Shown: positions 2,660 to 53,972, counted from the first letter of the stretch. The stretch: DNA of 64,000 bases from Trichosphaerium sp. ATCC 40318 (GCA_038496445.1 JALMLS010000420.1:434001-498000); one strand, 5' to 3'. Notes: a model not told the origin generated them from the letters alone. Numbers and translations are program-made.

Positions 2660-3990
<1,331 letters not shown>

Positions 3991-12128: not shown

Positions 12129-13242
12129 ATGAGGCTAGTTGTAGTGTTATTAGCGTTGTCTTGTATCTGTGTAACGTACTCAGTCATTGTAGGCGCAATT
12201 GTAGCACCTCATGGCGCAGTGGCCTTCGATCCTGGTTATATACCATGGATAAACGCTACACATAAAGAATGGGTACGAAAACCGCCAACTGTAAAACAAT
12301 AAGTAAATTAGCGCACGAGTTACAATCTTTCTTACCAAAACGTAGGCATACGCTCTAAATAAGGCGTTACTTGACGTTGGTAAACTAACGGTATCTCTTG
12401 AACCGGATATAATATTTTTAAGCACTCCGCATGGCGTAGCGGCTTCTAAGGACTATACAATGTACAACAACAACGATGGCTACGGTAACGCGGATCAAAC
12501 GGAAGGAAAATACACGTTTAAAGGATACCCCAACATCAAACAACCTATCGACATAGAAATAACAAATAAGCTTGTAGAGTCGATGGGTTTAAAGAACTTT
12601 CCAGTTTCTGAGATAACAGCCTTCGCTGAGGGCGAGTCGATGCCTCTAAGATGGGGAGAAGTTATACCACTGTCTTTTATGAACACAAAAAAGTATAATC
12701 CGTCACTTGATCACGTGGCTAGAACGGTCATTTTCTCACAACCTAGGAGACGTATTAAATTAAATGGTTTACCCATGATTAATGAGTTATTACGTCTTGG
12801 TTCATCTCTAGCTGAAGAATTACATGCCATGAAGGAGAGAGTTGTTATATGTATCTCAGGAGACTTAGCTCATACTCATGACAAAGACGGTCCCTTCGGA
12901 TTTTCTGATGAAGCTGAGCCTTATGATGAAGCAATCATGAACTGGCTTTCGAGTTTAGATAGCCGCCATTTAATAGGGACTAACGCTGACGATAAAGAAT
13001 ATTATGATGATTTTGCTGTTGGGAGTGCTGCTAGTTATGTTGAGAAGGCTATTTCTTGTGGGTTTACAGGGTTTGTGATGCTTCAAGGTATCATAAACCA
13101 AGTTGGACGTGAGGTACTAGAAAGACTTTTTTTTTGAACAAAATTAGTTTTTTCTCATTGTAGTTGTTAGTGGACTTCTCATATTATGGCTGGTCCGTAT
13201 CACCCAACTTATTATGGTATGATTGTTGCTTCAATGTATTAA
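12129..13242 (+). CDS. LigB/Memo-like (class III extradiol dioxygenase fold) protein with signal peptide
   Basis: Motifs APHG, IIFLSTPHG, PLRWGEVIPL, VICISGDLAHTH and TYYGMIVA; hydrophobic N-terminus MRLVVVLLALSCICV. Confidence 0.75.
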
Positions 13243-30713: not shown

Positions 30714-31897
30714 ATGCAACAACAAGAAGATACAATCAGTTGCCTCGAAACAGACGTTTCTACGCGTGGAGATCAAATTGAACGTATCAGAGAGCGAATT
30801 GACTCAGTATCGCTTAAAAAAACGTTAATCGACGTTACAGATGACGGTATTCTTTATATTCTCGAATGGCTAGATCTAATAACTCTAATAACCGTTTCTT
30901 CCGTTTGCAAACACCTCTACACAATGTCTACGATCCAACAAAGCTACAATCCAATTCTACCTAAGATACATTCAGTTACAACAGAGTTCCAAAACAATAA
31001 GTACACACTCGACATTGTGATGGATAAGTTCGACCCTAAAATAAACTTAACGGTTAAGATTAAGACTTTTGCAAAGCAAGAGTACGATACAGGTATAAGT
31101 CCATTCTATAGAGATGTGGCACTTGGAACAGAACACGTGGTTACTTCTTTATCAGAAGAAGGACGTAATGATGCTACTGTAAAGTATTCAATTAATGTCC
31201 TTGCTTATCTTCAACAAGCAAGTGACAGAGATGTGTCAGTTATAATTGAGGCCAAAAAGAATGGAAAAACTTCAACTTCAAAACAGTACAATGTTGTGTT
31301 TGTTTGCTACTACATGCTCTATCCACCTTCGTGTTGTTTTGATGGACAAGCGTTGGTACTCATGAGCGACGGATCAAGAACGAGGGCCAAGGATATAGTC
31401 GTTGGAGATAGAGTAAGATCAGCGTCTGGAAGCATTCAAGTAGTGGAGCGCATTGATGCAACTCGTCAAAAAGTCAGAAAAAGGATGGTGTATCTTGGTG
31501 ATTTTTGGATAACACGTGGACATCCAGTACTAGTTGACGGCGAATGGTACATAAATAACATTCGCTTTCTTTGATTTTTGAATTTATTGCAAAAAGCCTC
31601 GCAGAGGAGAGATTATAAGATCTAACTTTTTTTTAAAGGTACAGACCAGATGAGTTGAAGAAGCCTGTTGAGAGGTTATCTGATGGCTTATACAATTTTG
31701 TTCTCGATGGAGAACATACTATATGTGTTGGTAAATCACAAGTATACAAATGTTGTACTCTTGGTAAGTACTGTGGTGTTCGTTTAGAGCGTTTATATCC
31801 TGCTCAAAATAAGAACTATGGAAGAAACTACTTGAAGAAAGTTGACAAAAAAGTCGGCACTGCGAGCAATGCTCAGTGTGCTGCAAAGTATCGCTGA
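30714..31897 (+). CDS. F-box protein fused to a C-terminal Vint-type Hint (intein-like) domain
   Basis: F-box LIDVTDDGILYILEWLDLITLITVSSVCK. Hint block A CFDGQALVLMSDGS..DIVVGDRV, block B ITRGHPV and C-terminal YNFVLDGEH..CCTLG. One GT-AG intron (31547-31638) restores GEW/YRPDEL. Confidence 0.85.
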
Positions 31898-34056: not shown

Positions 34057-36055
34057 ATGCTCCAATTAACTCCTTTCACAGAGGGAAGTCCCCTAGTGAG
34101 TGTTTACCTTGGTCCAAAAGGCAAATGGATGGTACTTGATCAAATAGCTAAGGTTGTGTTTAACTGGGATGTTACTGTGTTCAGACGCAAGATAATATTT
34201 AACCGTGCGTATTGTTCAGTGTAGTAAGTTAGTTTACGTTAAAAAAGAAATGACAACCGGAAACACCTATAAAATGATGAAAAACAATGACGCAAAGCTA
34301 TTACAACAACTACGCGATATTAGTATAGTGGATAAGAAAGCAAAACACGTATATCTGATATCAGTGCGTGAGGCTATCTAAAACAAAGAGTTAACAGCTT
34401 TTATTTAGGTACCGAGCCTTGGTCTGTTCATTCGAAGTTATAGCAGGCGTGCATCACTTTTTACGCGTTTATACGACACTGTGTACCAACTACAGGTAAG
34501 TACAATCAAAGTTAACCGACACAACAACATTTCCTGGTAAAAAAAAGGTCTTGCAATACTGCTCCCACTGTTACCTTTATTTTTACAGGAAAAATAAAGA
34601 GAACGCTTTTAAACAATAATTATTAAACCACTACGTCTAGTTTGGTAAAAATACTCTGGGAACGCCAAAGCGAAAAAGAACTTTGACGGCTGCTGATAAG
34701 AAAAGAGTTGCTGCCAGTCAAAGTTGGACTTGTGCACATTGTAAGCAATCTCTAAATGCTCGTTATGAAGTTGATCATATAGTACAATTTGCACATGGTG
34801 GTACAGACGATCCATCTAATTTACAGGTAACAGTTCTTTTTTTTTTTTTGGTTGAGAAATTAACTGTCTTTTTCTTTTGTTTTATGCCCACGTGGGCTTT
34901 AAGTTTTTTTTTTGTGACGTTATTTGTATTTAACGATTTTGATAAGGCGCTGTGCTCGAATTGTCACGCAGCAAAGACAGATGCAGATCTGTGTAAAGAT
35001 AGACAATCAATTCGTCAAGATGAAATGAATTTTCTAGCGCCTTTGATTTCGAGTCAAATGAACTCTCAGCGACCTTTACCTCGAAAGCCAATTATAAATT
35101 CAAGGTCATTAGATGGATTACAAGATGCTCTAGCAAGTTTTGATAATGCTGATGATGATATATCTCAAGAAAATGATGACAAATTAGGAGAAGAAATAAA
35201 AGAAAGTCAAAAAGATGAAAGCGCTGATTACGATATTTTCGATATCAACACAATGTACAAAAGTAATGATGATAGTAGTCTAAGTATAAACTTGTTTATG
35301 GATGATGACGATTTGCCAGATAAAAATAAACCAAGCGACCGTAGTGAAAAAAAGGATTCATTTAAAGACATTTCAGATAAAGACCTTGAACATCTTGAAG
35401 ACGAAGTCCAAAAAGACTTTGATGCTATTATGGGTGAATCAATTGATGAAGATGCAACACAAGTTGACCTCATCAAGCCTCAGGATGATGTATCTATGAT
35501 TGATATACCTGATGAAGACGAAGAACAAGAAGAAGAAGACGAAAACCTATTTGTTGATGAATATCAATTTAATGAAGATGACGATAAAAACGATGGTGAC
35601 TATATAGCAGACGATGATAACATTAAAAAGCCAGCATCAATACCTAAACCAAGGAAAAAACCAAAGAAGAAGACACCTAAAAAAATAGGCACGTGACCAT
35701 CTTTTTCAACCCCAAACGAAGAAAACAATAACACTATTTTAAGCATCTTAATATTATGTCATAACTGACTGTTTATTAGGTGTACAAGGCGGTAAAGTGA
35801 CAAAAAAAAAGAAAACTCCTAAAAAAAAACCTGGAACTGGATTTTCTGCAAAAGGTTTCTTTTCTCCACCTTCAAAAAACCTATCAAAGAAGAAGATAGG
35901 TAATGTAGTATTAACACCTAGAAAGTTGAGTAAATCAGAGTACGTACAAGCTTTTTAAATTTAAATAGAAAGTTCGAAAATGCTAAGTTTTCCTTAGTGA
36001 CAATAGCGATACGTCATTTGGTATGCAACTACGTAGCTCCGTAGACGCTAAATAA
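34057..36055 (+). CDS. HNH endonuclease-domain protein with N-terminal putative DNA-binding domain, acidic region and Lys-rich tail
   Basis: KKRVAASQSWTCAHCKQSLNARYEVDHIVQFAHGGTDDPSNLQ/ALCSNCHAAKT, spliced; long D/E tract; KKKTPKK repeats. Confidence 0.85.
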
Positions 36056-48588: not shown

Positions 48589-49636
48589 TCAATTCTGTTT
48601 ATTCAACTCGGCTATCTTAATTTTAACTTGCTTCAAATATTCTACTTTAGCTTTCAAGTCATAGGCTTTCACACGTGCTATTCATATTATTCAGTAATGA
48701 TGTCAATGGTATCACATGATATTGCAACGTACCTGATGAAGAGGGTACAACAAAGCAAGGTATACTAAGATCATTATTTACAATCAAATCATCCTGCCAT
48801 CCTACTTTGCAAAAAGATTTCTTAAGCACAGTTTTATATATCCCTATACCGTTGAAGCAAACTACCCTTTGAAAGATTTGTTACGCTCTTTGTGTAATCG
48901 TAATGTTAGCCAGTACGCACTTTGGTTTGTAGTTGTTAAGCTTGACAAGTAACTCCTTGAATCCATCACAAAGCTCGCCGTCTGATAGCAAAGCAGTTGT
49001 ATTTGTAGAACGTTTAACAAGACACGTCAATCCAATGCCGTACTTCATAACAGTATTATCCTCACCTACATAACTTAACACGTTTAATAAACCTATGTCA
49101 TTCATTTACCTGGTGTAAGTTGATGTGGTGTCAGACCTACACGCCAAGTGTCAACATACATGAAAAAAAAATGAAGGGTTTAAGCTTAATTTACTCACCT
49201 GAACGCCACAGCATTGGCCAAAAATGGTTTGTCACGTGAGAATACCATTGTTTCCGACTGGCTGATTTTGTGCCAGGGTTATCTCCAATGATAACCAGGT
49301 CTAAATCGGGTGCTAAAAAGTCTGGCAACCTGTAAACACCAACAGTTAGTTTTAATGCGCCATGGATACCACCAAATACATACCCATCATCCTGAGCTAC
49401 ACGCTGACGTTTTGGAGCATGTTGTATGTAGTTTGTAATTAAGTTTGAGGAATTTGGTCGTTTTTTTTTCTGTGGAGTGGTTACAGGTGATTTTTGACGC
49501 GTCGCGGTAGATATGGCGCGTTCTATTGCTTCTAAACAATATTTGGCAAAAAAGACAACCCAAATTTTGTTTTTATGTTCTCATTACGCGTACCGAACTC
49601 TGAAAGCGATATTTCTTCAACTTGTACGTTATTCAT
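48589..49636 (-). CDS. G/T-G/U mismatch DNA glycosylase (MUG/TDG family)
   Basis: LPDFLAPDLDLVIIGDNPG; NHFWPML; YGIGLTCLVKR; VCFNG; VVPSSSAR. Confidence 0.92.
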
Positions 49637-49731: not shown

Positions 49732-51229
49732 ATGTTGAGAAATACTGTTTTACTTGTCGCTATCTGTATTAGCGTAAGCCTATGTCATATTTGCTTTATA
49801 GACCCTCCACAGCGTGGAAAGCAACTCACTGGGATACCAGGTACGTCATTCTTCAAGTTTTGGGGTTCTTTCGACTTGAAAACACCGAAACAAAGGCTTT
49901 GCGGGGCGAACTATCCGAAAAATTTTTCAGTTTCTGTTTTGGCGAAATCTGCTACGAAACTTCGGTTTTCTTCGCCCTAAAAAAACGAGAATAGAAACTG
50001 ATTTCCCTATTTATGTGGTTATTTTATATACACTAACGCTATCCAGGCGACCCTGCGTGCTATCGTAGAACACCATACTGCGGTGGTATACCGATTGAGA
50101 CGCCAGTAACGACATACAAAGTGAACGAACCTGTCCTTATTCATTTTCAACAAAACTTAAACCATTGGTTCTCTCCAAGGCCTGGTCACCTCGATTTCTC
50201 AATCTCATACACTAATACACCAACTGACGATGATTTCATTGTCTTAAAGACTTTCTCCGACTTTGCAGGACACGAGATGGTTGTCTCAACAAATTTCACA
50301 TTTGTTTTAACTTTTCCACGTGGAAAGACATGTGATCATTGTATCCTTCGTGCGCGTTATGTCTCCAATAACCCACTTGAGATTTCACCAAAGAACAACA
50401 CTGACGCAAGATTTTATAACTGTGTTGACTTTAAGATTGTTGATGATACTGATGGTGATGAACAAGACCAAGGTAGAAGCTCTATGGAGATTCCTGAATT
50501 ACAAGAAGAAAAAGTTGTAGCGAAAAAATCAGTATCCTCAAGCGGTTTTGGATGTACTACTGTTCCACAATGGGAAGGTACTATGACTGAAACAAGGAAA
50601 GAAGGAAAAGTATTTCATCACCTTTGGTATGATGCTGTAGAACAACGATTACGTTGGGATAGAAGTGGCGCAATAAGGTACACCTTTTTTATCAAAACAA
50701 GAAAAAAAGTTGGTTTACCTTTCATTTACTGACGAGTTCTTCCTTAGCCCTTACTACCAACAGTTAACAACATACTACATTACTAAGCCTAGCCTTGTTG
50801 AGTACCTTCATTTTCCTACAAAGGGACAGTGTTTGGCTTACGGTCCTGACGCTTGGTATGATTGGTCTTATGGTGCTTCCGTTGGACAAGCTCTTATTCG
50901 TACGAGATTTACAAATTATTTCTTTCATTTTTCTTCTTTACGTCACGTGCCAATTTATGCTTACTTCTTCCTTCAAAGGTAACGATACAATCTCTGGCAC
51001 TAAGGTATATGTGTGGGGAACAGACCAATTTGAGTGGATAACTACAGTTGACTGCGAACCTGTTGGAAAAGTACAACTTGGTTTGAACCAGGTAGAATTT
51101 TTATGGACTAGCTTCAAGAAAGGTGTTGATGCTTCTGCTTTCGCTCTACCATCAGGTTGTGGTAATAAAAAACCACAAAGCGATTGTGGTGCCACCGAAG
51201 AGCAGATAAAAGAACTATTATCATTGTAA
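49732..51229 (+). CDS. Secreted protein with an N-terminal His1 LPMO-like domain and a C-terminal ependymin-like domain
   Basis: Signal peptide ends immediately before HICFIDPPQRG; QNLNH; CDHCILRARY..FYNCVD; then CTTVPQWEG..WYDAVEQRLR..FALPSGC. Confidence 0.75.
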
Positions 51230-51531
51230 TAAAAACTAATAGTTGCTCCAAAAACGCCTTGTTATTTAATTAACCTTTCTATATTTGAAAACAAACAAGG
51301 CCTCACACGTGTCCCTTTTCAAAAGCTACAGCGCTTTACATTTTCTTTGGAATTGTCAACGTCACGTGATAATGTTGGGTATGCCTGTGCAAAGCCGTTT
51401 TACAAAACAGGAGCTAAACTGTGAGTTTCATGAAAACTTCGCACCGGACTTACTGTGTGGATTTCCCGAAAACAAAAAGAGGAGTTAAGACGGTTAAGCT
51501 TTCGAAAAACATTTCTGGATTATTTTCAACC

Positions 51532-53972
51532 ATGTCACAATCACTGATACTGCTATGTCTTACTCTTACAATAACACAAGCGCTAGCAGGTCAATTTATA
51601 AACTTTCAATTCTCCGGTAGAACAAACCGTCTTTTTATCCCTTCTACTTCATACAGTAATGTACCTGCACCTCTCTTTGTAATGTTACATGGCTGTACGC
51701 AAAATCCAAACGACTTTTCAGGTAGGCCGAACTATTAATGCCCGTTGATCTTTCAAAGGTGTTTTGTACTCTAACTTTTCTTTAGCTGGTACTCAAATGA
51801 ATGTTGTTGCCGAGAAGTATGGATTCTATGTTTTGTATCCTTTACAACCAAGCTCTGCTAATACTAACAAGTGTTGGAACTGGTACCTAAATCACTTCGA
51901 TCTTTCGGATAAATTATTTAAAAATAACATATGCCACGTGTTTTGAGTTTTGTGGCCTGTGGATATGGGTTGACTAAATTTGAGTAGGTTTGAAAGACAA
52001 CATCAAACTAGAGGCAAAGGAGAACCTCAACTCATCGCAACAATGGCTCAAGCAGTACGGAGACTAATGTTGCAAAGTAACAAAGTACTCAATGCTACGT
52101 TTTAGGTCATGGAGCAATACAGTATCGATAAGGAGAACGTTTATGTTGCAGGTATGTTCAAGCCATAGAATTTGATTAAGTGATAGTATCTAACTGTAAA
52201 AAAGGGTTATCAGCAGGTGCAGCCATGGCAGTCATCGTTGGTGCAGTACGTGATTTTCTTTTACATCGGTAACATGTGTCTTATTTAATTGAGTGATAGA
52301 CCTATCCTGATGTATTCGCTTGTATTGGTCCAGCAGCTGGATTGGAGTATCAAGCAGCAACTAGTGTTTTGAACGCTTATACAGGTAACTACTGTTTTGG
52401 TTTCACTCTGTGTAACTTATTTGCTTCGTAGCTATGAGTAGTGGAGGTCCGAATCCACGTACACAAGGTCAGGTTGCTTACAAAGAAATGAATTCTGGTG
52501 GTAAAAATGCAAGACCGCTTTGTGTCGTTGTTACTCAGGTATAATTATGTGCAACCCGAAGAGCTTAACACGTTGCTAGGGAACTTCAGATTTCACTGTG
52601 AACAAAGTTAATGGTTAGGACTTTGTGTTGAGTCCAAATCTAATAACGTATGATTAGGTGAGCAAGTGAGCCAGCAGTGGTCAGTAACGAATGACTTGAG
52701 TTTGTGTGGTGGCACAGAATGTGGTGAAATGCCTTTCACGCCAACGAAATCCGAGAAACTTCAGGTGAATATTCTTTCTTTATTCATTTTAAGTTTGACA
52801 ACACTTATGGTTTATACTCTTGATTAACTATATTCTTAGGTGCCAGGAGGAAGAAGTTATACTGCAAACTACTACGAACAAAAATGTACGCTAACAATAA
52901 CGAAATTAAACGTTTTCAGCAACTGATTTGTGTTCGCATAGCAACTGGAAAAACGTGGATGATTTATCTTGTTAGTACGTAACCCTATACTGATTTCATA
53001 ACCTAATGTTTATAAATTAGTTGATGGTATGGGCCATGCTTGGTCTGGCGGAAGTACATCAGGGACATATACTGATCCAAAAGGACCAAACGCTTCCGAA
53101 ATAATGGCTGAGTTTTTCTTGAACTCAACAGTAAATCCAACACCAGTAACTGCCCCGCCTACTGATGTACCAACTGCTCCTCCACCTACCGCTGCACCAA
53201 CAATTGCACCGCCATCTAACGAGCCTCCAACGATAGCGCCAACAGAAGCGCCAACACCAGTACAAAAACACAATCGCTAAAATACGATTAACTTTTTTAA
53301 AGAGCGGAGATGAACTTGAGTTTATGTCAATTGGCGATGAAGATGGGTATGTAGGAATGCTTGAAGCAGATGGTATGTCCACTTTAGATTGTAAAGTAGG
53401 CGATAAAGGAATGTTTAACGTTGACACATATCGTTTAATTCTATCCTTTGATACTTCCAAAATCCCAGGTATGTTCCACAATGCATTTGTTTATTACTTA
53501 CTTTCTCTATAGCTGGCGCTGAGATTACTGGAGCCAAACTTAGTATCACCAAAAAGAGCTTATCTGGTACTATATCTAGCATTTCTATTGACATGAGCGA
53601 TGGTGGGTTTAGTGGTAAGACTTAAAAAAAGTGAAAGTCGTCTTCTATTCACTTATGAAATAGGTTCTAACAAACTATCAATGTCGGACTATTCCGCTTC
53701 AGCATCATCATACAACATTGCATCAATGCCGGTGCCAATAAACAATAGTCAAGTGTCATCTGTCATACTTCCAGAAAGCTCTTACAAATTCATTAACAGG
53801 CACGTGACATGTAAAGCGAGTCAATTAAGCTAACCTTATTATCAGACAACCAGGAAATAGAACACAATTCAGACTTAAGGAGGAAGCAACAGCTAGTTTT
53901 ACAGCGAACCTCTTATCAGCTTACTGTGGAGGAACACAAAACCCTCCTACTCTAGTGGTGTCTTACTCATAA
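51532..53972 (+). CDS. Secreted PHB depolymerase-family esterase with Pro/Thr linker and C-terminal beta domain
   Basis: VMLHGCTQ; CWNWF; GEP; [12 protein letters not shown]; YPDVF; GMGHAWSGG; TDPKGPNAS; many introns. Confidence 0.93.
53128..53260 (+). repeat. Coding Pro/Thr low-complexity linker repeat
   Basis: [33 protein letters not shown]. Confidence 0.7.

What the first reader, a model, noticed from the sequence alone, without database searches (positions are those of the whole stretch)
49732..51229. His-brace LPMO-like domain fused to an ependymin-like domain
Seen: His directly after the predicted signal cleavage (SLC|HICF..PPQRG), a second His (QNLNHW), and a CxxCxL..Y...FYNCxD end, followed by a C..PQWEG..YD..R.R ependymin-type domain. 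Established: His1 plus a second His form the copper brace of LPMOs, and ependymin-related proteins bind lipids and are lysosomal or secreted. Inference: a copper enzyme targeted to lipid surfaces, for example prey envelopes in phagolysosomes, possibly in an unclassified AA-like family.
Basis: partly seen in the sequence, partly recalled or inferred. Interest (0 to 1): 0.7.

Follow-up and report, generated by a model that had tools for sequence, protein, structure and literature searches.

The report
Copper His-brace domain fused to ependymin
This intact four-exon gene of a microbial eukaryote encodes a secreted protein that joins a small LPMO-type copper "histidine-brace" domain to an ependymin-type lipid-binding domain; this pairing is widespread in protists, I found no paper on it, and it points to copper chemistry at lipid surfaces.

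Summary
Window 49732-51229 (+) holds one gene of four exons with three GT-AG introns, about 380 aa. An 18-residue signal peptide is followed directly by His (SLC|HICFIDPPQRG). A second His sits in FQQNLNHW, and the N-domain ends in CDHCILRARY...FYNCVD. Both domains meet inside exon 2, so the fusion is not a gene-model artefact.

The gene belongs to a family of 536 cluster representatives. The N-terminal His is invariant and follows the signal peptide in all 66 members that have their start. The second His and the Phe of FYNC are also essentially invariant.

I modelled a homolog that is 47% identical to exon 2 (pLDDT 91.5).
- Its N-domain matches only LPMO or LPMO-like structures; AA15 is best, then AA10, AA9, AA11 and X325.
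- Its C-domain matches EPDR1 (Foldseek E 2e-8; sequence profile E 2e-14, with the four clade-wide cysteines aligned).

The functional idea, an oxidative enzyme working on lipid surfaces or prey envelopes, remains inference. A non-catalytic copper carrier of the X325/Bim1 type is the main rival. Brace geometry could not be measured because no coordinates were available. No paper in the library holds both "LPMO" and "ependymin". I rate it a new variant of a known kind, interest about 0.65.

The parts
49732..51229 (+). Whole coding region, ATG to TAA: four exons (49732-49840, 50047-50677, 50748-50899, 50979-51229), about 380 aa
   Evidence: Sequence and translations. Exon pieces are colinear with homologs and with the domain profiles.
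49732..49785 (+). Signal peptide, 18 codons (MLRNTVLLVAICISVSLC)
   Evidence: The same leader-then-His layout occurs in 66 of 66 relatives. SignalP was not run.
49786..49788 (+). His1 codon (CAT), the predicted mature N-terminus and first brace ligand
   Evidence: Invariant in 65 of 65 relatives. Aligns with His1 of JdLPMO10A in the HMMER alignment.
49786..50441 (+). LPMO-like His-brace domain, about 150 aa, interrupted by intron 1
   Evidence: Pfam LPMO_10 E 0.0013 and BIM1-like E 0.0036, both below cut-off. The homolog model has pLDDT 96.8. All Foldseek hits shown are LPMO or LPMO-like.
49841..50046 (+). Intron 1 (GT..AG, ACTAAC branch-like site). The junction codon GGC gives the Gly of the family motif PGD.
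50163..50165 (+). His58 codon (CAT) in FQQNLNHW, the candidate second brace ligand
   Evidence: Invariant in 80 of 80. It is the only other invariant His in the domain.
50412..50414 (+). Phe codon of FYNCVD, at the axial position
   Evidence: 83 of 84 are Phe. Aligned with the Tyr (chain residue 184) of the YRNCADI motif in the AA15 structure 5msz, and with Phe in the AA10 chains 7okr and 5aa7.
50442..50552 (+). Acidic interdomain linker of variable length (DDTDGDEQDQ...SSSGFG)
   Evidence: This is the lower-confidence segment, residues 150-178, of the homolog model. It is poorly conserved.
50553..51226 (+). Ependymin-related (LolA-fold) domain, starting at Cys of GCTTVPQWEG and interrupted by introns 2 and 3
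   Evidence: Foldseek to human, mouse and frog EPDR1: E 2e-8, TM 0.65-0.73. Profile against EPDR1: E 2e-14 with four Cys aligned. The window pieces hit the profile at E 2e-12, 8e-12 and 6e-7.
50678..50747 (+). Intron 2 (GT..AG; junction codon AGC = Ser)
50900..50978 (+). Intron 3 (GT..AG; junction codon CGT = Arg)

Best explanation
Shown: the gene encodes a protein with a signal peptide and two domains. The N-terminal domain of about 150 aa has the LPMO beta-sandwich fold. It carries the sequence hallmarks of a mononuclear copper histidine brace: His as the first mature residue, a second invariant His, and an axial Phe in an AA10/AA15-type F-Y-x-C-x-D motif. The C-terminal domain is a homolog of ependymin-related protein EPDR1, a LolA-fold protein with a hydrophobic groove. 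EPDR1 binds anionic lipid membranes and has been proposed to act as a lysosomal lipid activator or transporter. Inferred: the protein binds one copper ion at the brace and works in the secretory or endolysosomal space. The EPDR domain takes the place that a carbohydrate-binding module has in ordinary LPMOs. It either docks the copper domain on a lipid surface or lifts a lipid-anchored substrate out of the membrane. The copper site, once reduced, then uses O2 or H2O2 to oxidise a glycan at or on that surface, for example a glycolipid head group, lipopolysaccharide, or envelope polysaccharide of ingested prey.
For: The fusion lies in one exon. The family has 536 representatives, 151 of them at E<=1e-30, and many cover both domains. 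His follows the leader in 66 of 66 members. H1, H58 and F140, plus the polar residues flanking the brace (Q9, R10, Q53, Q54, N55, N57, E129), are invariant or nearly so across euglenozoans, Chromera, an amoebozoan and the window. That degree of conservation is what one expects of an active site with a conserved substrate. The homolog model has pLDDT 91.5 and pTM 0.88. The N-domain hits only LPMO-type structures, with AA15 best at E 1e-6 and TM 0.66. F140, C143 and D145 align with Tyr184, Cys187 and Asp189 (5msz chain numbering) of the AA15 enzyme. The C-domain matches EPDR1 at E 2e-14. EPDR1 lipid binding and the activator proposal come from PMC6363788. There is no C-terminal hydrophobic GPI-type signal. 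Named hosts are mostly phagotrophs.
Against: No coordinates were available, so the brace geometry, the openness of the fourth equatorial site and the shape of the putative substrate face were not examined. The structure is that of a 47%-identical homolog, not of the window protein. More members hit the Pfam BIM1-like model, a non-catalytic copper binder (46 of 65), than LPMO_10 (40 of 65). The domain is as small as X325. Invariant acidic residues (D90, E129) could occupy the fourth copper site. Nothing was tested on localisation, copper, lipid or substrate. Chromera, a phototroph, also has the gene.
Confidence: 0.5

Rival explanations
1. It is a non-catalytic copper-handling protein of the X325/Bim1 or CopC type. 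The brace binds copper tightly, with a carboxylate filling the fourth site. The EPDR domain tethers the protein to membranes so that copper is captured, buffered or handed to a transporter, for uptake or for loading phagosomes.
For: Pfam BIM1-like is the most frequent family hit (46 of 65; best E 8e-8; some members above the cut-off, such as P0114 at 31.9 bits). The domain is a compact 150 aa, like LaX325, which is also a Foldseek hit (6ibi, E 8e-4, TM 0.56). D90 and E129 are invariant. X325 members showed no polysaccharide activity (PMC7924993).
Against: AA15, AA10, AA9 and AA11 enzymes outrank X325 in Foldseek. The C-terminal motif and the axial Phe are of AA10/AA15 type. There is no GPI signal. 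The distribution is not fungal. A plain metal carrier would not need so many invariant polar residues around the brace.
Confidence: 0.3
2. It is a copper oxygenase whose substrate is the hydrophobic ligand itself. The EPDR groove holds a lipid, sterol or carotenoid-like molecule, and the brace oxidises it, as proposed for mononuclear copper sites that attack C-H bonds.
For: pTM of 0.88 for a two-domain chain suggests a fixed domain arrangement. The LolA/EPDR fold binds diverse hydrophobic ligands, and VioE, an enzyme, is among the structural hits. A sponge EPDR binds a carotenoid (8i34; PMC10470211).
Against: No known LPMO-fold protein oxidises lipids. The relative position of groove and copper site was not visible. 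The linker is long and variable.
Confidence: 0.1
3. It is a metal-free binding or structural protein, with the LPMO-like domain acting only as a glycan- or protein-binding module.
For: The first known family members of this fold were described as chitin-binding proteins. UniRef labels the Chromera member 'Chitin-binding type-4 domain-containing protein'.
Against: Strict invariance of a His placed exactly at the mature N-terminus, together with the second His, is hard to explain without metal binding.
Confidence: 0.05

Closest known systems
AA15 and AA10 lytic polysaccharide monooxygenases (Pfam LPMO_10; e.g. TdAA15A 5msz, JdLPMO10A 5aa7, CBP21 2bem)
   Same: Secreted. His is the first mature residue in an H-x5-P-x2-R start. 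The fold is a beta-sandwich. A conserved strand motif (H/N-C-[IV]-L-x-x-x-[YW]) is followed by [FY]-x-x-C-x-D, with the aromatic residue at the axial position. These are the best Foldseek and best PDB profile hits.
   Different: Identity is only 10-22%. TM-scores are 0.45-0.66. The PDB sequence-profile E-values are not significant (0.1-0.3). The window piece falls below the Pfam cut-off. The domain is much smaller, with a short L2 region, and has its own invariant QQNLNH motif. It is fused to an EPDR domain rather than to a CBM. Activity is unknown.
X325 / Bim1 LPMO-like copper-binding proteins (Pfam BIM1-like_dom; LaX325 6ibh-6ibj)
   Same: A small domain of about 150 aa with the LPMO fold and an N-terminal His brace. 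It is the most frequent weak Pfam match in the family.
   Different: X325 proteins are fungal, GPI-anchored and have an Asp as the fourth copper ligand. Here there is no GPI signal, the hosts are protists and some animals, the Foldseek rank is lower than for the true LPMOs, and the fourth ligand could not be checked.
Ependymin-related proteins (EPDR1/MERP; Pfam PF00811; 6e7o, 6jld, 6jl9)
   Same: LolA-type fold. The C-x-x-P-x-x-W-E-G start. The four cysteines of the two clade-wide disulfides align. The D-P-S-x-F-x-P-P-x-x-C end is shared. Both are secretory proteins (PMC6363788).
   Different: Known EPDRs are described as stand-alone single-domain proteins; here the domain is the C-terminal half of a fusion. 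Only 18 of 62 relatives reach even E<=0.1 on Pfam Ependymin. The vertebrate-specific third disulfide is incomplete.

Membership tests
LPMO superfamily (His-brace copper proteins of the AA10/AA15 type) | His as the first residue of the mature protein, directly after a signal peptide | tested here: met
   Window: SLC|HICF. The same layout occurs in 66 of 66 relatives with an N-terminus, with a small residue at -1. The cleavage site is inferred because SignalP was not available.
LPMO superfamily (His-brace copper proteins of the AA10/AA15 type) | A second conserved His that completes the brace | tested here: inconclusive
   H58 in QQNLNHW is invariant (80 of 80) and is the only other invariant His. 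HMMER put it five residues away from a later His (chain residue 91) of the AA15 chain. An ungapped register from the shared G-S-T aligns the two, but that register is my reading, not a structural superposition.
LPMO superfamily (His-brace copper proteins of the AA10/AA15 type) | Axial Phe or Tyr in the C-terminal strand motif | tested here: met
   The Phe of FYNCVD (83 of 84 Phe) aligns with Tyr184 (chain numbering) of 5msz and with Phe in 7okr and 5aa7. That Tyr184 is the axial residue of TdAA15A is from my own knowledge.
LPMO superfamily (His-brace copper proteins of the AA10/AA15 type) | LPMO beta-sandwich fold | tested here: met
   AF2 model of the homolog N-domain, pLDDT 96.8. Every Foldseek PDB hit shown is an LPMO or LPMO-like protein, with the best at E 1e-6 and TM 0.66. 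This was tested on a homolog 47-49% identical to the window, not on the window protein.
LPMO superfamily (His-brace copper proteins of the AA10/AA15 type) | Score above the Pfam LPMO_10 gathering cut-off (23 bits) | tested here: not met
   Window exon 2 scores 19.9 bits; that piece lacks the first 19 mature residues. 40 of 65 relatives hit at E<=0.1, and a few pass the cut-off (P0096 27.0, P0116 26.3, P0019 23.2).
LPMO superfamily (His-brace copper proteins of the AA10/AA15 type) | T-shaped copper coordination, copper binding and oxidative glycosidic bond cleavage | not testable with these tools
X325 / Bim1-like copper-binding proteins | Score above the Pfam BIM1-like_dom cut-off (27 bits) | tested here: not met
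   Window exon 2 scores 18.2 bits. 46 of 65 relatives hit at E<=0.1, and a few pass the cut-off (P0114 31.9, P0109 29.1, P0009 27.3).
X325 / Bim1-like copper-binding proteins | C-terminal GPI-anchor signal | tested here: not met
   The C-terminus is an EPDR domain ending in the hydrophilic ...CGATEEQIKELLSL. Relatives end similarly.
X325 / Bim1-like copper-binding proteins | Asp carboxylate as the fourth equatorial copper ligand | not testable with these tools
   Invariant D90, E129 and D145 exist, but their distance to the brace could not be measured. D145 corresponds to the structural Asp of the AA10/AA15 C-x-D motif.
Ependymin-related proteins (EPDR) | LolA-type EPDR fold | tested here: met
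   The top 17 Foldseek hits are EPDR1 (human, mouse, frog) and the sponge EPD protein, at E 2e-8 to 3e-6 and TM 0.63-0.73. Tested on the homolog model.
Ependymin-related proteins (EPDR) | Significant sequence similarity to EPDR1 over the whole domain | tested here: met
   The family C-domain profile against human EPDR1 gives E 2.1e-14 over profile positions 3-173. The window exon pieces match that profile.
Ependymin-related proteins (EPDR) | The four cysteines of the two disulfides conserved across EPDR clades (C42/C172 and C113/C210 in human EPDR1) | tested here: met
   The four family cysteines are 61-63 of 62-63 conserved and all are present in the window. They align with the EPDR1 cysteines. 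The disulfide pairing is taken from PMC6363788.
Ependymin-related proteins (EPDR) | Score above the Pfam Ependymin cut-off (32.3 bits) | tested here: not met
   The window pieces give no hit. 18 of 62 relatives hit at E<=0.1, best E 1.5e-7.
Ependymin-related proteins (EPDR) | Hydrophobic groove that binds lipids or other hydrophobic ligands | not testable with these tools
   This needs coordinates or binding assays.

The most novel reading that the evidence does not exclude
This is a new, ancient eukaryotic family of copper oxygenases whose built-in EPDR 'activator' domain extracts or presents lipid-anchored substrates (glycolipids, lipopolysaccharide, lipoprotein-linked envelope polymers, or lipids themselves) to a histidine-brace site. 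It would be the first LPMO-type chemistry directed at membranes rather than at crystalline polysaccharide. It would also be a Rosetta-stone clue that free EPDR proteins, whose function is still open, work together with oxidative or glycan-processing enzymes.
Probability: 0.2. Interest if true: 0.85.

Novelty: new variant of a known kind. Interest (0 to 1): 0.65.

Why it matters
LPMO-type copper sites are known for attacking crystalline polysaccharides, and their partner modules are usually carbohydrate-binding. A conserved fusion to a lipid-binding EPDR domain, found across distant protist lineages, suggests a new substrate class or place of action for histidine-brace chemistry: membranes, glycolipids, or bacterial envelopes inside digestive compartments.

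It also gives the poorly understood ependymin family a concrete, testable functional partner. If the protein is catalytic, it would define a new auxiliary-activity family. If it is not, it extends Bim1-type copper handling well beyond fungi.

Tried and rejected
- **Whole-protein profile against PDB sequences:** no hit at all. Only the separate domain profiles gave hits.
- **Viral relatives:** none found in IMG/VR by pattern search plus tblastn. BFVD gave only weak LPMO-type hits (two unnamed entries, fusolin, GP37) and no two-domain analogue.
- **Bacterial and archaeal species genomes:** one hit. That contig, filed as a Verrucomicrobiaceae MAG, carries PIP5K, a protein kinase, a cathepsin-B-type protease with propeptide and a fragmented OPT gene, so I take it for a mis-binned eukaryotic contig. 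This scan used only two peptide patterns, so absence from bacteria is weakly supported.
- **The window's own protein or transcript:** not found. The best match to exon 2 is 47% identical. An exact look-up of a neighbouring ORF also found nothing.
- **Organism:** not resolved beyond 'an MMETSP organism' with a monofunctional thymidylate synthase. The window is not human.
- **Pseudogene or merged gene model:** rejected. All conserved positions are kept, the frame is open across both domains within exon 2, and there is a single copy in the window.
- **Long-architecture relatives:** their C-terminal region had no Pfam or PDB sequence match.
- **Literature:** no paper holds both 'LPMO' and 'ependymin', and none of the papers listed contains 'ependymin'.
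- **Tree:** the quick tree did not resolve the window's nearest labelled relative.

Full report
**What is in the sequence**

The window is eukaryotic: about 37% G+C and short spliced genes. Between 49732 and 51229 on the + strand lies one gene of four exons.
- Exon 1: 49732-49840
- Exon 2: 50047-50677
- Exon 3: 50748-50899
- Exon 4: 50979-51229

All three introns start with GTAC and end with AG. The junction codons give Gly, Ser and Arg. The Gly completes the family motif P-G-D.

Exon 1 reads MLRNTVLLVAICISVSLC|HICFIDPPQRGKQLTGIP. Exon 2 carries FQQNLNHW, CDHCILRARY and FYNCVD. After an acidic linker, still in the same open frame, it carries GCTTVPQWEG...WYDAVEQRLRWDR. The two domains are therefore fused within a single exon, and the fusion cannot be an artefact of joining neighbouring genes. 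Exons 3 and 4 finish the second domain.

I built no joined protein of the window gene, and I neither searched nor folded one. Structural statements rest on natural full-length homologs.

**The gene model and its family**

Exon 2 alone found 15 relatives of 180-366 aa that cover it end to end at 38-53% identity. The four exon pieces align colinearly with them.

A profile of 13 members was scored against 1.84 billion representatives. It found 536 proteins at E<=0.001 and 151 at E<=1e-30. Two architectures appear:
- proteins of about 340-460 aa that match both domains, as in the window;
- proteins of about 470-570 aa that share only the first 170 residues.

Profiles of the two domains, run on the six-frame translation of the window, hit only this gene, in consecutive profile segments. 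The window keeps all 33 positions that are at least 90% conserved. This is an intact, single-copy, canonical member.

**The N-terminal domain**

- In 66 of 66 members that have an N-terminus, an invariant His follows a 13-25 residue hydrophobic leader with Ala, Gly, Ser or Cys at -1. That is the layout required for a histidine brace.
- Invariant or nearly invariant positions are H1, C3, P7, Q9, R10, C23, C30, Q53, Q54, N55, N57, H58, G65, D90, Y122, E129, F140, C143 and D145.
- Pfam gives only sub-threshold hits for the window piece: LPMO_10 at 19.9 bits and BIM1-like at 18.2 bits. Across 65 members, 46 touch BIM1-like, 40 touch LPMO_10 and 3 touch AA9, with a few above the cut-offs.
- An AlphaFold2 model of the N-domain of homolog P0019 (47% identical to exon 2) has pLDDT 96.8. 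Every Foldseek hit shown for it in the PDB is an LPMO or LPMO-like protein. AA15 from Thermobia is best (E 1e-6, TM 0.66). AA10, AA9, AA11, AA16, AA13, fusolin and X325 follow.
- The domain profile's three best PDB sequence hits are two AA10 chains and the AA15 chain. Individually they are not significant (E 0.1-0.3), but the printed alignments are informative.
  - The start H-x5-P-x2-R lines up with HGWVTDPPSR of the 142-residue AA10 chain.
  - The strand H-C-I-L-R-x-R-Y lines up with (E)HTILARW in AA10 and NCVLQWFW in AA15.
  - F140, C143 and D145 line up with Tyr184, Cys187 and Asp189 (5msz chain numbering) of the AA15 enzyme. From my own knowledge, that Tyr is the axial residue of TdAA15A.
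- The axial position is thus Phe, as I recall for most AA10 enzymes.
- HMMER did not align H58 with the AA15 His at chain residue 91 (which I recall as its second copper ligand). An ungapped register from the shared G-S-T does align them. I mark this as my inference.
- No coordinates are exposed by the tools, so the brace geometry was not measured.

**The C-terminal domain**

The full-length homolog model (pLDDT 91.5, pTM 0.88) has human, mouse and frog EPDR1 as its best PDB matches (E 2e-8, TM 0.65-0.73). The sponge ependymin-type carotenoprotein, VioE, LolA and RseB follow.

The C-domain profile hits human EPDR1 at E 2e-14 over the whole domain. The alignment covers the C-x-x-P-x-Q-W-E-G start, the D-P-S-V-F-x-P-P-S-x-C end and four cysteines. 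According to the EPDR1 structure paper, those four form the two disulfides conserved across EPDR clades (PMC6363788).

Pfam Ependymin is reached at E<=0.1 by only 18 of 62 members, and not by the window pieces. The domain is a divergent but genuine ependymin-related domain.

**Distribution**

Members with a named source come from:
- diplonemids (Flectonema, Rhynchopus)
- the phagotrophic euglenid Entosiphon
- the amoebozoan Vermistella
- Chromera velia, whose protein UniRef names 'Chitin-binding type-4 domain-containing protein'
- MMETSP transcriptomes

The long architecture occurs in Ancoracysta and in the annelid Owenia.

No relative was found in IMG/VR viral contigs. The single hit among bacterial and archaeal species genomes lies on a contig whose other genes are eukaryotic, so it is probably mis-binned.

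A quick tree splits the family into two well-supported halves. The window falls in the larger, purely two-domain half, without a resolved nearest labelled relative.

The window's organism is represented in MMETSP, because a neighbouring ORF is 100% identical to an MMETSP transcript. It has a thymidylate synthase with no DHFR domain fused upstream. By established knowledge that fits Opisthokonta or Amoebozoa, but I did not identify the organism. The window is not human.

**How it most likely works**

Shown: a signal peptide, an LPMO-fold domain with brace-type invariants, and an EPDR domain.

From the literature: the histidine brace binds copper tightly and supports oxygenase or peroxygenase chemistry in LPMOs, but only copper binding in X325/Bim1 and CopC (PMC10952591, PMC7924993). 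EPDR1 is a lysosomal and secreted protein with hydrophobic grooves. It binds anionic-lipid membranes and was proposed to be a lipid activator or transporter (PMC6363788).

Inferred: the EPDR domain replaces the carbohydrate-binding module of ordinary LPMOs. It brings the copper site to a lipid surface or presents a lipid-anchored glycan to it, and the reduced copper site then oxidises that substrate with O2 or H2O2.

I favour catalysis over mere copper carriage for four reasons:
- the brace is surrounded by many invariant polar residues across very distant lineages;
- true LPMOs outrank X325 structurally;
- the C-terminal motif is of AA10/AA15 type;
- there is no GPI anchor.

The margin is modest, about 0.5 against 0.3.

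**Novelty**

No paper in the library holds both 'LPMO' and 'ependymin', none of the papers listed contains 'ependymin', and no dedicated Pfam family exists for the N-domain. The survey of EPDR evolution found EPDRs with the Pfam model, which most of these proteins fail (PMC6280359).

I rate this a new variant of a known kind: a distinct LPMO-like clade in an undescribed, conserved fusion with an EPDR domain.

**Limits**

- The structure is that of a homolog, not of the window protein.
- There is no transcript evidence for the window gene.
- The cleavage site is inferred.
- Copper binding, activity, lipid binding and localisation are all untested.

Noticed in passing
Relatives P0096, P0116, P0134 and others (not in the window): A second architecture exists: the same His-brace N-domain followed by about 380 residues with no Pfam or PDB sequence match. 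It is found in the predatory protist Ancoracysta and in the annelid Owenia fusiformis, so this N-domain family reaches into animals.
   Followed up: partly
L007 (JAIYDP010000152.1, 14867-35955): This contig is deposited as a Verrucomicrobiaceae MAG. It carries a family member (P0009) next to a cathepsin-B-type protease with propeptide, and also PIP5K, a protein kinase and a fragmented OPT gene. It looks like a eukaryotic contig mis-binned into a bacterial MAG.
   Followed up: partly
window 51530-53280 (+): The next gene downstream encodes a signal-peptide protein of the Esterase_PHB (PHB depolymerase / feruloyl esterase-like) family with a Pro/Thr-rich C-terminal tail. It is another secreted degradative enzyme.
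   Followed up: partly
window 49191-49328 (-): An exon of a uracil/thymine DNA glycosylase superfamily gene lies on the opposite strand about 400 bases upstream of the start codon.
   Followed up: no
window 2660-3990 (-): A thymidylate synthase gene in several exons has its own short N-terminus and no fused DHFR domain. This hints that the organism belongs to Opisthokonta or Amoebozoa.
   Followed up: partly
window 12460-13134 (+): A LigB-type extradiol dioxygenase ORF is 100% identical to an MMETSP transcript. Its next-best relatives, about 40% identical, are from marine invertebrates.
   Followed up: partly
window 30714-31574 (+) and 34683-35696 (+): One ORF combines an F-box with a Hint/Vint domain, and a separate ORF of 337 aa has an HNH endonuclease motif.
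   Followed up: no
window 50553-51226 (+), EPDR domain: The mature protein has an odd number of cysteines: six in the N-domain and five in the EPDR domain. The last one aligns with EPDR1 Cys222, whose partner Cys88 is missing here. It may be a free thiol, a dimer link or an interdomain bond.
   Followed up: no
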